Positions 45,402 through 50,915 of a stretch of 64,000 bases of DNA are shown here, one piece after another. The position numbers and the translations under genes were made by a program. A model generated the notes under the pieces. The model worked only from the letters and a program-made list of their open reading frames with translations. It ran no database searches and was not told the DNA's origin. Positions within the stretch are counted from its first letter, which is position 1; each line of letters opens with the position of its first letter. Origin of the DNA: Magallana gigas (lineage: Eukaryota); NCBI RefSeq assembly GCF_963853765.1, contig NC_088858.1:43276001-43340000 (forward strand), in the 5' to 3' direction.

Positions 45402-48139
45402 CTATTTTGACGATGACAACTGTCTGTTTTTTCTTAATTGTTTAAATTCCTCGAATTTTTTCTGTTTTTGCTGCCTTTGTCTGTAAGCTCTGTCATGCTT
45501 TTGAAGTTCCTCCTCTGTTTCACTTCCTGAGCCATCACTCTCAGCCTCACTTTCACACCCTGAACTACTTTCACTTTCACTTGATTCACTGGAAACAACA
45601 ATGCTGCCTTGAACTTTCTCTACAGAGGCACAATAAACAGAAAGTTCCTCATCACTCTCAGTTATAACCACTTCTGCTCCTGAGTCTGTGTGCTCAAATG
45701 CTTTAACATCTGAATTTGATTGCTGCTCTACTGATGCAATTGAACTGGATGGACTGTTGTTAGAATTTGCAGTGGCACCCAAGTTGTGACAGCTCTCATT
45801 CTGGGGAGATTTGTTGTCATTGTCATTTTCTTCCACTTCTGTGTCAGAATCACTAGATTCTATCACATTGCTTTTATACTTGGTCTTCTTCAATTTCAAG
45901 CCAGACAATGGTGAATTTGACCTTGAACCATTGTCTTCAGTCACCTTTGAACTTCCTTTACCTAAACTTCCTTCATCAGCTGAATCATTCTGTAATGGCT
46001 GACAAGAATCACTTTCTTCGGAATCAGAGTCACTGTTCTTTGGAAGTAATCTTCTTCTGTATCCTTTAATTCGACTTGGGTGTGGTGTTTCCTATAAAAA
46101 AAAAAAATTATCACGCATGTGTATCATTATTGTGCCTATGCAATTAGAACATCCAGTTGATAGGATTTGATAGGAAAATATTTATTGCAATAAATCTCAA
46201 TTAATTTAATAAAAAAATATCTCAAGTATAATTAAAAATGAATTATCAATAACATATCAAAGATTAACTTGCAATGGTAATGACACATTTATTTCAATAA
46301 TTTATGAAAACCGACATATACAATACATACATCCGATTCTTCATCACTCTCTTCTTCATCATTAATGAATTCATCAATGTCATCACTGTCATAATAACCA
46401 TCTTCAAATATCTCATATCGATCAGCATTATACCTATTTGTTCTGAAATAATTAATGTTTCCCATTTAAATATCACTTCCTAATGTCTCATTTATAGGAA
46501 AAAAAACAACGAGGAGCATTTATCAATATATATATTGAGTTACACTTTGGTGAAGTCGTTGACGCTTTTCGGTGGAGTTATTGATTTTATCTTCTCTGTC
46601 GAAGGAATGTCTTTCCAGATGTCATCCTTTTTAGGCATGGCAAACTTTTTTTTGTTTCTTATTCTCTCTGAACTTCTTGAATGCTACAGTTGAAAAACAT
46701 AAACAATCCATGTTTAATTATCATCAAAATTTTAAAAATAAATTGAAAATGTTTTTTGGAGACTATATCTACCTTTTTGAATATGGGTTTCTAACTTACA
46801 CATGTAATTAGTCCTACTTTACAGTACTATCTATTCTTTAAATATTATAAAATGCCTTTTTAGAATACATGTTTAGAGTATTTATCATGCACTCATAACA
46901 ATGGATTTATTCCCTTATTTTTCAACTAGGAAGAAGTTTTTTTTTCAGAGCTGTTAAGAAACCACATCCTATAATTATTCATGCCTGCCAAGGTATTGAT
47001 CAGTATTCAATACATTCTGGTTTAGACTTCTAATACAGAGTTAATTTTGATAAAGGAATATTTTGTACCATCATGAATAGTGATATACTGAATGTCCATA
47101 TTGTATCTAACGTAGTGAATAAAAAAAAATAAAAACTTCAAGAGCTTGGAAAATTACATATTGTAGGTACTACATGTATTAAAATATCAAATTTTTAATG
47201 GGGGCATGGTCATGTTTTTTATTAAATTTTACTTTTAAAGTTTAAATATATACAAGTACAATGCTTTTATTAGTGAAGTATTTTCAATGATCATCAAAAA
47301 TGACACAGTCATCTGTCAAGTTCTAAGCCAAAAATAGAGATCATAATTTAAAACTTTATAGGTAAAGAAGACTAATGCAGTTATGCATTTCTTGTGCAAT
47401 GCTACCTTCACCTCTGCATCTGAATCACCAAAGAAAACATTTTACTGTTTTAATATATGGTTGCAGAATAATATTAGTCATCTGTTGCATGATAGGAAAA
47501 AGGTTACCATGTGAAATGTGTCTTAATATAAATAATTTTAAATTATATCTAGTTCTGCAATATCAAAAGATGCATTTTTCTTGGAGCCCTTTTTTGCCTG
47601 AAAAGTGTTCATGTTGTAATAACATATAAATACTACATGTGAAAATATCTATATAAAAAAATACTAATGAAAAAATACCTGGTGAGATTATTTTAGTGTG
47701 ATGAAAGATAACATGTATTAAAGGGCCTACATCATACAGAAAATAAAATAAAGTTTATATTTACAACCTTGATAAATGTCTATTTTCATTTTAACAGTTT
47801 AAGCCTGAAAAGTGAAGACCCGTGCCTGCAGTGTTTCTATATTTGTGCAAAAATGTTGCAGTAAGTATAATTAGAAATATTCTGTAAGGTTTACACTATA
47901 TAGAGAGGTTATAGGTTAAAATTGTGTTTAAACCAGACTGCTGTACATTTGTGCATATATCTGCTGCATTTAACTGTGTATATTTTTCCAGTTACCGCAG
48001 AACGTTTTGCGCACGATGTTTCTGGTGTCTGCTGATCACAAGAGGTGTCCTCTTCGCTGCTTACAACATCACTGCAACTCCTTTCACTTATTTTCCTCTT
48101 TTTCTTGAGAGAACTGAAAAATTCTTCGTCTGAAGACAT
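45402..48139 (-). CDS. Uncharacterised acidic, Ser-rich nuclear-type protein, 361 aa (loosely CCDC82-like)
   Basis: Exons 48139-47996, 46683-46544, 46442-46331, 46091-45402 with phases 0/2/0 consistent. Features: KKKRK NLS-like motif, YYDSDDIDEFINDEEE, SD/SE tracts, basic C-terminal helix QKQKKFEEFKQLRKNR. Confidence 0.75.
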
Positions 48140-48362
48140 TGCGGAAACAAACCACTTCTAACGAATTTTAGAGATACTGACGCGCAAAACGTAATATTCC
48201 GGATTAACACGTTCTGTGGTTTGATTGTTTATTTTCAAGAATGTTTGTTTGTTTAACTGTATGTTGTTTTTTTTTAAATTTTGTTTATTTAGAATGTTTT
48301 TGGGCAATACGTAGGGTTGCTTTATTGTATTTTTCATTCAAATATATTCTGATACAAAATTA

Positions 48363-48543
48363 NNNNNNNNNNNNNNNNNNNNNNNNNNNNNNNNNNNNNN
48401 NNNNNNNNNNNNNNNNNNNNNNNNNNNNNNNNNNNNNNNNNNNNNNNNNNNNNNNNNNNNNNNNNNNNNNNNNNNNNNNNNNNNNNNNNNNNNNNNNNNN
48501 NNNNNNNNNNNNNNNNNNNNNNNNNNNNNNNNNNNNNNNNNNN
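48363..48543. other. Assembly gap (181 N)
   Basis: Run of n. Confidence 1.
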
Positions 48544-48692
48544 NGAAAAATGTGTGAGATTTCTTTTTGGGTTTTTTTTTACCCACAATTTCTATGGATG
48601 TCGGGAATCATTTTTTTTTTTATGTTTACATTCCACATATTTTTTGCTTGTCAAGTGTGTTGAAAGCTATGGCAGTTATGAATGTAAATATA

Positions 48693-48849
48693 AGCATTAA
48701 ATCATGATTTTTTGAAGTATACAGTCTCACAACTGCAGCGATGTGTGCATACAAATTTTCATAATGCGCTAACGCGCCTTACTCAATTTGTATGCACACA
48801 CCACTGCAGTTATGAGACTGTATACTTCAAAAAATCATGATTCAATGCT
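48693..48849. mobile_element. Long palindromic hairpin element between divergent genes
   Basis: About 65-bp inverted arms agcattaaatcatgattttttgaagtatacagtctcacaactgcagcgatgtgtgcatacaaatt / near-complement, around a central gcgctaacgcgc. Confidence 0.85.
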
Positions 48850-48922
48850 ATATTATGATCCAAACTACATTTACATAATTATCTCTTTAGTCATAATGTA
48901 ATGTCGTCACAGTGCGAATCCG

Positions 48923-50915
48923 ATGACGTCACAATTGGAACAGAAACTTCACAACGAAGTAAGGAGCTAGGTAGAAGCACACAAGTTTGGTATTGAAAAA
49001 ACACAGAGAATGGAGCGAGACGGTAAAGATATTTTGCGAAGACTGAATTCGGACAAGCTGATGGTATGGCGATGGATGAACATGTGTCAAATATACGCAT
49101 AAATCTATTGCATATTATATTGATTGGCCATGGTTAGCTATGAAATTCTTACATAGAGTACTGTAAGATTAGTGCACATATTATTTTATAATTTTTATTG
49201 TTTGGTTTACCATTTTATTCTTCATATCAAACTCGCGTAATCGTTTCTTTGGTGTTTCATAAGACACCTAACTTTCTCGTAAAAAATTATATTACTATAC
49301 ATGTATCTATATCATACACACCCATATAATGACAATATAGCTAAAAATTAAAAAAAAATCTTTTTTTTTTTTTTTTTTTTTTTTTGCTGATAGTCCCCCA
49401 CGCCTGAAATGCTTCGAGAGTTACCCCTCTCTGACATTGGCGAACGGGCAGAGAGATACCACAGAATCGTGAGTCTACTCACCTGTATTTTCATGGTCAT
49501 CTTTTTCTTTAATTCTTCGCTAGAAGATATTTAATTGATTGGCTTCGGTTTAAAGAAAGCCACTGTGGGCATCTGCCTAACTTCCTTGCTTTAATCGTTT
49601 TAGATGATGGCAAGAACTAGGACACAGATACTGCTTATGGACAATTTATGCCAGCAAAGGGGCCTAAATATGAAGGTTATTACAAAGTATTTTATTTCTC
49701 GTAAATAATTCTAATTTAAACTAATCAAATCAAATACATTTGAATAAAATAAATAATATTTATTCCGCATTCTTTCTTCTTCAGAAAATCCTGGAAAGAC
49801 AACGTTGGGAGAGAACTCCTGAATCGGTAAAACTTTTGAGGATGCAAAATTCCAATATCAATCTGTGTAGTTTTGAAAATTATCTATTAAAAATTGTTGG
49901 TTAATAATGTTTGTTTGATTTTGCAGGATTTGGGACCACTTGTTGGCCTAAAACACGAAGCCGAAGACGATCTAGAGAGGATCAAGTTAAGGATCATCAA
50001 GCCTTCCAAGGTTTGTATTTTTCATTCTTATATGATATTAAGATTTTCTTGAAACGGATAATAGTGAGACCGAGTCATTGTTACAACATACCATAACATT
50101 TCTTTTCCCCTCATACAGAAAAGAAGCTCGGGACATTCTGCCGATGACCGCGTGGCGTCCTTTTACAGACTGAACGCTGACGATGAGAAGGTAACATGAT
50201 GGAGCGTTGAATACTGAAATCTGATTGGTGTAGACGCATTTGATAATCCGTTCTATTACCCTTAGCGTTAGCAACACACTTGCATGGCAACGGGTAACAC
50301 AACGAATTGTTACATGCGCATAAACTATGCGCGTACGGTTCGCCATAAAATTCATGTCATTTACATAATTACAAAAAGCATTAAAGTTTTTTTTTTAGTT
50401 AAGACATTCAGTATAATAAAATAGTGCCTCGAAAACCATTGTCAACCTCCGCTTCGAGTCGGTTGACAATGGTTTTCTCGGGGTGTCAATTTCAACTCTT
50501 ACCCTTCTAAACACCAGGCACCAAATTTGTATTTATATGATGTCATCAAATAAAAATATGAAAAACCAAAACATCATGACTTGTCTCAATGTAAAATCTG
50601 TTTGGTTCTTTTACTATAAAGGACAACCTGCACGAATATAATGATGGCTGTGAAGACTTGTTCAGAGATTCCCAAAATGATGGGAGCAAAACCAAGGAGG
50701 ACAGCAAGGTATACATGTATATGCACTGTGTACTTAATTAACGTGTTAAAACCACGGTTTTTCATTATGATATGCATGCAATGTTACGCAGATAAAATGA
50801 ATTTAAACAATTTTTTTTCTTTAATATACAGGAACCACAAAAGAAAAGAAAATCGTGGAAGAAACGATTGCTGAAACTGTTTAGCTGGTGCAGTGGCTCA
50901 GCAGAGAAAAACTAG
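48923..50915 (+). CDS. Uncharacterised small protein (about 200 aa) encoded by all-phase-0 mini-exons
   Basis: Exons 48923-48958, 49007-49063, 49394-49468, 49604-49675, 49785-49826, 49927-50010, 50119-50190, 50622-50708, 50832-50915. All are GT-AG and open in phase 0, ending EPQKKRKSWKKRLLKLFSWCSGSAEKN*. AATAAA at 51014. The 5' end is ambiguous. Confidence 0.8.
50404..50490. mobile_element. Palindromic hairpin element in an intron of the mini-exon gene
   Basis: 17-bp perfect arms gaaaaccattgtcaacc (50431-50447) / ggttgacaatggttttc (50461-50477) around tc-cgcttcgag-tc. Confidence 0.75.

What the first reader, a model, noticed from the sequence alone, without database searches (positions are those of the whole stretch)
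48923..50915. Hidden gene built entirely from symmetric phase-0 mini-exons
Seen: nine segments of 36, 57, 75, 72, 42, 84, 72, 87 and 84 nt, each a multiple of 3 with good GT-AG sites, joining into one open frame (MTSQLEQKLHNE RMERDGKDILRRLNSDKLM SPTPEMLRELPLSDIGERAERYHRI MMARTRTQILLMDNLCQQRGLNMK KILERQRWERTPES DLGPLVGLKHEAEDDLERIKLRIIKPSK KRSSGHSADDRVASFYRLNADDEK DNLHEYNDGCEDLFRDSQNDGSKTKEDSK EPQKKRKSWKKRLLKLFSWCSGSAEKN). It is absent from the ORF track and I recognise no homologue. Known: schistosome micro-exon genes use all-symmetric short exons to diversify by skipping. Inference: any internal exon can be skipped without frameshift. The polybasic, amphipathic, Cys-bearing C-terminus suggests membrane targeting or palmitoylation.
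Basis: partly seen in the sequence, partly recalled or inferred. Interest (0 to 1): 0.7.

Follow-up and report, generated by a model that had tools for sequence, protein, structure and literature searches.

The report
Annotated oyster gene, all phase-0 introns
This is a real, expressed but already annotated Pacific-oyster gene for a small, water-loving protein of unknown function found only in oysters. Its run of in-frame short exons is a mild curiosity, not a schistosome-style micro-exon diversity system.

Summary
The nine segments exist and join as described, but the gene is not hidden. It is Pacific-oyster LOC105326384: segments 2-9, read from the Met at 49010, equal RefSeq XP_019921975.3 (189 aa) exactly.

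- **Transcripts:** spliced contigs from three studies show six introns exactly, imply a seventh, and carry a poly(A) tail near 51039.
- **First exon wrong:** All three contigs and an orthologous transcript read through into an in-frame stop. Its ATG and GT are not conserved in the two paralogues.
- **Phase-0 run:** the seven real coding introns are all phase 0, expected in roughly 0.4-3% of such genes.
- **Protein:** very hydrophilic, with no signal peptide, Pfam domain, PDB relative or confident fold. Relatives were found only in oysters; dN/dS is 0.34-0.40.
- **Micro-exon genes:** it fails their defining features.
- **Exon skipping:** recorded only in public protein models (exon 4; exons 4+5; exon 6), not in the RNA I laid.
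- **C-terminus:** the basic helix plus Cys is the best-conserved part. Membrane anchoring is plausible but untested.

The scan found true micro-exon genes elsewhere in this genome, but not this family.

The parts
47996..48190 (+). Candidate upstream non-coding exon, joined to 48913 in an orthologous transcript. The same stretch is the first exon of a head-to-head minus-strand gene.
   Evidence: The L016 transcript aligns 921-1115 to 47996-48190 and then 1116-1268 to 48913-49063. The skipped stretch 48191-48912 is GT..AG. Use in M. gigas itself is not shown: the X1 and X10 contigs are continuous upstream of 48913.
48913..49009 (+). 5' untranslated part of the first coding exon.
   Evidence: The contigs are continuous over 48829/48896/48911-49063. 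An indel polymorphism (+A / -4) sits at 48978. The orthologous transcript is also continuous here.
48923..48970 (+). It is not conserved.
   Evidence: Read directly from the sequence. The ATG is GTG in paralogue B and is followed by TAA in paralogue C and in L016.
48924..48931 (.). Palindromic TGACGTCA (CRE-like), preceded by CGTCAC half-sites. It is conserved in all three paralogues and in the orthologous transcript.
   Evidence: Its function was not tested.
49010..49063 (+). Coding exon, 18 codons from the true start ATG (context acagagaATGg).
   Evidence: Equals the start of XP_019921975.3. The ATG is conserved in B and C.
49394..49468 (+). Coding exon, 75 nt, phase 0/0.
   Evidence: Joint 49468>49604 in X3 and X10. 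92-96% amino-acid identity in the paralogues.
49604..49675 (+). Coding exon, 72 nt, phase 0/0. It is absent from UniProt K1Q2H2 and has the weakest donor (gttatt).
   Evidence: Both of its joints appear in RNA contigs. The model minus this exon equals P0001 exactly.
49785..49826 (+). Coding exon, 42 nt, phase 0/0.
   Evidence: Joints seen in three runs.
49927..50010 (+). Coding exon, 84 nt, phase 0/0. Best-conserved internal exon.
   Evidence: Joints in three runs.
50119..50190 (+). Coding exon, 72 nt, phase 0/0.
   Evidence: Joints in three runs.
50622..50708 (+). Coding exon, 87 nt, phase 0/0. Acidic and fast-evolving, with in-frame indels in the paralogues.
50832..50915 (+). Last coding exon, 27 codons plus TAG. 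It holds the basic amphipathic helix and the conserved Cys.
   Evidence: Joint 50708>50832 in X1 and X3. The core is invariant in Magallana and near-invariant in C. virginica.
50916..51039 (+). 3' UTR with AATAAA at 51014-51019 and a poly(A) site near 51035-51039.
   Evidence: A loose end of 17 A follows 51039 in X1; sequence.

Best explanation
This is the annotated, expressed Pacific-oyster gene LOC105326384.

**Gene structure.** It has eight coding exons (54 coding nt in the first, then 75, 72, 42, 84, 72, 87 and 84 nt) and seven phase-0 introns. It encodes a 189-residue protein of about 22 kDa that is basic and very hydrophilic.

**Family.** The gene is one of three paralogues on one chromosome. 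The family was found only in oysters and is under purifying selection.

**Protein layout (predicted).** An N-terminal part of about 105 residues forms amphipathic helices. It is followed by a fast-evolving acidic disordered linker, then a short, highly conserved C-terminal basic amphipathic helix that ends in a Cys.

**Most likely mechanism (inferred, about 0.3).** The protein is an intracellular adaptor or regulator. Its C-terminal basic helix, possibly S-acylated at the Cys, holds it on acidic membranes. The N-terminal helices bind a partner.

**Phase-0 run.** The all-phase-0 structure is the ordinary bias of genes for disordered proteins. It allows occasional in-frame cassette skipping (exon 4, or exons 4+5) but is not a diversity generator.
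For: **Shown**
- Exon coordinates and frame.
- Six exact GT..AG joints and a poly(A) tail in spliced contigs of three studies, with 0-1 mismatches, so they come from this copy and not from a paralogue.
- Exact identity of exons 2-9 with XP_019921975.3, LOC105326384.
- Two paralogues with the same exon structure and splice sites.
- dN/dS 0.34-0.40, Fisher p 1e-4 to 2e-3, and in-frame indels only in exon 8.
- Orthologues in C. angulata, C. virginica and Saccostrea echinata.
- GRAVY -1.19, pI 9.2, 40% charged residues and no hydrophobic segment.
- AlphaFold mean pLDDT 47.7, with helices at 4-14, 22-26, 33-61, 66-75, 89-105 and 171-182, and residues 106-170 unstructured.
- The C-terminal core is invariant across the Magallana copies and conservatively substituted in C. 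virginica. Its net charge is +5 and its hydrophobic moment 0.58.

**From the literature**
- Genes of mostly disordered human proteins are enriched in (0,0) exons: 35.7% against 23% (PMC3632108).
Against: - No experiment or homology supports any function. Pfam, PDB and the protein atlas are blank.
- The Saccostrea model lacks the basic C-terminus.
- The C-terminus has no CaaX box, and its KKRK stretch could equally be a nuclear signal in this copy.
- Tissue and subcellular location are unknown.
- Contigs cannot exclude minor skipped isoforms.
Confidence: 0.85

Rival explanations
1. One reading: a micro-exon-gene-like locus whose symmetric exons are combinatorially skipped to diversify a protein.
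For: - All seven coding introns are phase 0.
- Public models exist that lack exon 4 (K1Q2H2 for this gene, K1PL95 for paralogue B).
- Other public models lack exons 4+5 (LOC117688932 isoforms X4/X5) or exon 6 (C. virginica LOC111128604).
Against: - The exons are 42-87 nt, not micro-exons.
- There is no signal peptide.
- Nothing in any protein search resembles a schistosome MEG product; every hit is an oyster protein.
- The family has only three copies.
- Assemblies from three studies show only the all-exon form, and no skipping joint was listed.
- The skipped forms are few and are gene models. The two 2012 models may be prediction misses.
- The exons are not duplicates of each other (best z 1.8 of 28 pairs).
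Confidence: 0.07
2. Same gene, different function: a nuclear or calmodulin-binding regulator. The C-terminal basic stretch would act as a nuclear localisation signal or as a basic amphipathic Ca2+/calmodulin-binding helix, not as a membrane anchor.
For: - A KKRK run precedes the helix in this copy.
- A basic amphipathic helix with Trp and Leu anchors is the usual form of calmodulin targets (established knowledge).
- Three S/T-P sites suggest regulation by phosphorylation.
Against: - The KKRK run is not conserved in paralogues B and C or in C. virginica, whereas the Trp/Leu/Phe face and the Cys are.
- No known motif spacing was verified.
Confidence: 0.2
3. A chance open frame on a non-coding or repeat-derived transcript.
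For: - No known domain.
- Low-confidence fold.
- Repeats lie in the introns.
Against: - dN/dS is well below 1 in three paralogue pairs.
- The frame, the splice sites and 47% amino-acid identity are kept in C. virginica.
- Indels are in multiples of three.
Confidence: 0.02

Closest known systems
RefSeq LOC105326384 (XP_019921975.3; UniProt A0A8W8HTN7 and K1Q2H2), uncharacterised protein of Magallana gigas
   Same: Identical. Exons 2-9 from ATG 49010 give this 189-aa protein letter for letter. K1Q2H2 is the same protein minus exon 4.
Schistosome micro-exon genes (MEGs)
   Same: Exon lengths are multiples of three, so exons can be dropped in frame. The gene is taxon-restricted and has no known domain.
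   Different: By the MEG description in bioRxiv 10.1101/2023.06.21.545858, MEGs have:
- 10-20 exons, mostly about 15 nt;
- a conserved N-terminal signal peptide and secreted products;
- about 35 genes giving at least 87 proteins through splicing;
- a range limited to Schistosomatidae.

Here the exons are 42-87 nt, there is no signal peptide, the protein is intracellular-type, there are three genes, and the all-exon form dominates.
Genes of intrinsically disordered proteins built from symmetric exons (Schad et al. 2013, PMC3632108)
   Same: A largely disordered, charged protein encoded by a run of same-phase symmetric short exons. The alternatively spliced symmetric exons lie in flexible regions.
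   Different: Those examples often arose by tandem exon duplication. No exon-to-exon similarity is seen here.
Polybasic plus acyl-Cys membrane anchors at protein C-termini (for example hypervariable tails of small GTPases)
   Same: A cluster of Lys/Arg with hydrophobic residues next to a Cys, close to the C-terminus.
   Different: There is no CaaX box and no GTPase domain. The likeness is one of form, recalled from general knowledge, and was not tested.

Membership tests
Schistosome micro-exon genes (MEG) | Most of the coding sequence lies in micro-exons (6-81 nt, the majority about 15 nt; 10-20 of them). | tested here: not met
   Seven internal or terminal exons of 42-87 nt, mean about 74 nt; none is 36 nt or shorter once the false first exon is removed. 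Definition.
Schistosome micro-exon genes (MEG) | Exon lengths are multiples of three (symmetric). | tested here: met
   All seven coding introns are phase 0.
Schistosome micro-exon genes (MEG) | N-terminal signal peptide; secreted product. | tested here: not met
   The highest 9-residue Kyte-Doolittle mean in the first 38 residues is 0.36, and the highest 19-residue mean anywhere is 0.22. The N-terminus is charged.
Schistosome micro-exon genes (MEG) | Protein variation through extensive alternative exon use. | tested here: inconclusive
   Only the full form appears in contigs of three studies. Public models lack exon 4, exons 4+5 or exon 6. No raw-read quantification was possible: X21 gave no exon coverage.
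Schistosome micro-exon genes (MEG) | Sequence kinship with, or taxon range inside, Schistosomatidae. | tested here: not met
   All relatives found are oysters.
Oyster LOC105326384 family (uncharacterised) | Sequence identity or similarity over the whole length, with shared exon structure. | tested here: met
   Exact identity to XP_019921975.3. Paralogues are 78-81% identical with the same eight coding exons. C. virginica is 47% identical over 98% of the length.
C-terminal polybasic / S-acyl membrane anchor | Basic-hydrophobic cluster adjacent to a conserved Cys near the C-terminus. | tested here: met
   Residues 169-182 of P0005: net charge +5, hydrophobic moment 0.58, Cys182 conserved in Magallana and C. 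virginica.
C-terminal polybasic / S-acyl membrane anchor | Demonstrated acylation and membrane localisation. | not testable with these tools
   Needs acyl-exchange chemistry and imaging.

The most novel reading that the evidence does not exclude
An oyster-restricted family of disordered, membrane-tethered regulators. A cassette of symmetric exons (4, or 4+5) encodes the most hydrophobic stretch of the central long helix (AlphaFold helix 33-61) plus helix 66-75. Regulated skipping of this cassette would produce a shorter isoform that keeps the membrane anchor but loses the partner-binding helix, giving a built-in antagonist isoform.
Probability: 0.12. Interest if true: 0.35.

Novelty: already known. 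Interest (0 to 1): 0.15.

Why it matters
It matters little beyond annotation.
- It shows that an all-phase-0 run of short exons in an oyster gene need not be a micro-exon system.
- What remains of interest is a small, conserved, oyster-only protein family with a strikingly conserved basic C-terminal tail and no known function. It is a cheap target for a localisation experiment.

Tried and rejected
**Blank or uninformative searches**
- Pfam on single exons and on the whole database proteins gave nothing above cut-off. The best hits were PBP1_TM at 16 bits and Ctf4_C at 18 bits, both low-complexity noise.
- PDB sequence search with exons 3, 6 and 9 and with the family profile gave nothing.
- The protein atlas scored at most 0.79 for the whole protein (C5orf47/Vexin, within the noise range) and returned nothing for residues 1-110.
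- The AlphaFold model had mean pLDDT 47.7, so I made no fold search; it would be meaningless.
- Exact look-ups of P0001, P0010 and P0005 in assemblies returned no record.
- A paper search for the accession and LOC numbers returned no paper.
- Raw reads of X21 gave no exon coverage at about 1/100 sampling.

**Ideas tested and dropped**
- Internal exon duplication: rejected.

I then worked from coordinates.
- I sent no self-joined spliced protein to any search tool. Exons were searched one by one by reference. Whole-protein searches used database proteins, which I reached through exon 6 plus two upstream in-frame intron codons to meet the 30-residue minimum.
- Inside scripts, exon translations from the window file were concatenated only for frame, composition and identity checks.
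- The window's 336 N were left alone.

Full report
**Observation**

The window is AT-rich animal DNA of about 33% GC. Working from coordinates, a script confirmed the nine segments:
- 48923-48958
- 49007-49063
- 49394-49468
- 49604-49675
- 49785-49826
- 49927-50010
- 50119-50190
- 50622-50708
- 50832-50915

Each is a multiple of three, each junction is GT..AG, and the joined frame is 202 codons plus a stop. Introns are 48, 330, 135, 109, 100, 108, 431 and 123 nt.

**Transcripts**

Twenty public runs hold the stretch or part of it. Fourteen hold only 0.14-0.26 of its words, as expected for spliced RNA, because the exons make up about 0.28 of the stretch. I laid contigs of three such runs from three studies, plus one raw-read run, on 47400-52400.
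- The joints 49468>49604, 49675>49785, 49826>49927, 50010>50119, 50190>50622 and 50708>50832 appear exactly. All are GT..AG.
- They sit in contigs with 0-1 mismatches, so the contigs come from this copy and not from a paralogue.
- The 753-nt X3 contig (record 14) has 188 letters between its 49063 and 49926 pieces. That equals exons 3+4+5, so the 49063>49394 joint is implied. The tool masks the poly-T at 49342-49395.
- A tail of 17 A follows 51039, downstream of AATAAA at 51014-51019.
- No exon-skipping joint was listed, although two joints were not shown.
- The raw-read run gave no exon coverage.

- All three contigs run without a break over 48829, 48896 or 48911 to 49063. The 48-nt 'intron 1' is therefore retained.
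- That puts TAG 48968-48970 in frame. ATG 48923 opens a 15-codon upstream ORF, and the first in-frame ATG after it is 49010, in a good context.
- An indel polymorphism (+A or -4) at 48978 fits non-coding sequence.
- In paralogue B the ATG is GTG. In paralogue C and in an orthologous transcript it is followed at once by TAA.
- B and C have a real non-coding first exon whose donor lies about 20 nt further on, with introns of about 147 and about 1870 nt. In this copy most of that intron is deleted.

**Identity**

A search of 1.84 billion representatives with exon 6 gave four hits. The query was given by reference and included two upstream in-frame intron codons to reach the 30-residue minimum.
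- One hit was UniProt K1Q2H2 of Magallana gigas. It starts at the 49010 Met and equals the gene product minus exon 4 exactly.
- Word and profile searches from that database protein found XP_019921975.3, LOC105326384, 189 aa. It equals exons 2-9 from ATG 49010 letter for letter.

So the gene is annotated as 'uncharacterized protein'. I sent no self-joined model to any search tool.

**Family**

The genome holds three copies, all on chromosome piece C6.

| Copy | Position | Public gene | Notes |
|---|---|---|---|
| A | this window | LOC105326384 | 189 aa |
| B | about 94 kb upstream, opposite strand | LOC105324556 | XP_011421971.3 |
| C | 4.4 Mb away | LOC117688932 | one-base deletion in exon 6 in this assembly |

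- All three share the eight coding exons, the phases and the splice sites.
- In this assembly the deletion in C gives a 153-aa product, XP_065945115.1. Earlier RefSeq proteins of that locus are intact.
- dN/dS is 0.34-0.40, with Fisher p from 1e-4 to 2e-3. dS of 0.24-0.30 is similar to the intron divergence.
- The end of exon 4 and exon 8 are variable. Exon 8 differs by in-frame indels.
- Orthologues exist in C. angulata, C. virginica (47% identity over 98% of the length) and Saccostrea echinata (N-terminal part only). Nothing was found outside oysters. These searches have limited reach.

**Protein**

- It has 189 residues, 22.3 kDa, pI 9.2, GRAVY -1.19, 41 K+R and 35 D+E.
- It has no hydrophobic segment, so no signal peptide and no membrane span. 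It has three S/T-P sites.
- Pfam, PDB and atlas searches are blank.
- AlphaFold with the five-sequence alignment gave mean pLDDT 47.7. It predicted helices at 4-14, 22-26, 33-61, 66-75, 89-105 and 171-182, and left residues 106-170 unstructured.
- The most conserved parts are the N-terminal helices and residues 169-182. That segment has net charge +5, hydrophobic moment 0.58, and a Cys kept in Magallana and C. virginica.

**How it most likely works**

*Shown:* it is an expressed, selected, intracellular-type protein with two conserved modules joined by a fast-evolving acidic linker.

*Inferred (about 0.3):* the C-terminal basic amphipathic helix, perhaps S-acylated, binds acidic membranes, and the N-terminal helices bind a partner.

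*Rival (about 0.2):* the tail is a nuclear signal or a calmodulin-binding helix. The KKRK run of this copy is not conserved, which weighs against a classical nuclear signal.

**Phase symmetry and skipping**

Seven of seven phase-0 introns has probability 0.004-0.03 for phase-0 shares of 0.45-0.6. [quoted passage not shown] A genome should therefore hold dozens of such genes.

The exons are not duplicates of one another.

In-frame skipping is on record only as protein models:
- exon 4 (K1Q2H2 for A, K1PL95 for B);
- exons 4+5 (LOC117688932 X4 and X5);
- exon 6 (C. virginica LOC111128604).

Exon 4 has the weakest donor. This fits ordinary cassette splicing at most.

**Comparison with micro-exon genes**

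By the MEG description in bioRxiv 10.1101/2023.06.21.545858, MEGs have 10-20 exons of mostly about 15 nt and a conserved signal peptide. Their products are secreted, and splice variation is extensive. This gene meets only the multiple-of-three feature.

Earlier notes of this scan describe true micro-exon genes for secreted proteins elsewhere in this genome. I did not check those notes.

**Verdict**

This is a real gene, already annotated. The conserved C-terminal tail is worth a simple localisation test.

Noticed in passing
window 45423-48190, minus strand: A head-to-head neighbour gene. Its exons are about 45442-46091, 46330-46442, 46544-46684 and 47996-48190, with CT..AC introns. The ORF is at least 291 aa, has no Pfam domain and is single-copy in the genome. 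In a Logan contig of a related oyster (L016) its first exon is merged with the upstream non-coding exon of the gene studied here. This suggests overlapping divergent transcripts.
   Followed up: partly
window 48693-48849: A MITE-like inverted repeat with 65-nt arms, 94% complementary and 27 nt apart, just upstream of the first coding exon. RNA-contig depth over 48569-48902 is in the hundreds to thousands, so it belongs to an abundant transcribed repeat family.
   Followed up: partly
window 50200-50570 (inside intron 7): A second repeat with very high RNA-contig depth (up to about 6500). It holds a perfect 17-nt hairpin at 50431-50447 / 50461-50477. It accounts for the extra length of this intron: 431 nt against 97 and 125 nt in the paralogues.
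   Followed up: partly
window 48900-48931; L014 (reverse strand) 420-480; L015 260-325: A cluster of CGTCAC half-sites ending in a full TGACGTCA palindrome. It is conserved in all three paralogues and in the orthologous transcript, at the start of the first coding exon. It could be a cAMP-response-type element or a UTR element.
   Followed up: no
window 51350-52400, minus strand: A convergent downstream gene with exons 51350-51541, 51949-52094 and 52320 onward (CT..AC joints in three runs). It has a poly(A) end at 51350, about 310 nt from the poly(A) site of the gene studied.
   Followed up: no
L015 4485-4567 (G000:C6:38879484-38879566): In this assembly paralogue C (LOC117688932) has a one-base deletion at the end of exon 6. 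It shifts the frame, with a stop at codon 154. Earlier RefSeq isoforms X1-X5 of the same locus are intact. This is either a null allele or an assembly error.
   Followed up: partly
window 57428-58963: A 511-aa intronless ORF with DUF3504 (1.8e-22) and a weak phage-integrase match. This is the Crypton-type element already reported by another agent (s1-405588).
   Followed up: no
window 48911, X3 contig record 14: The 48 letters at the 5' end of this transcript contig do not match the window upstream of 48911, nor 48143-48190. They could be an alternative first exon or a chimeric end. I did not trace them.
   Followed up: no
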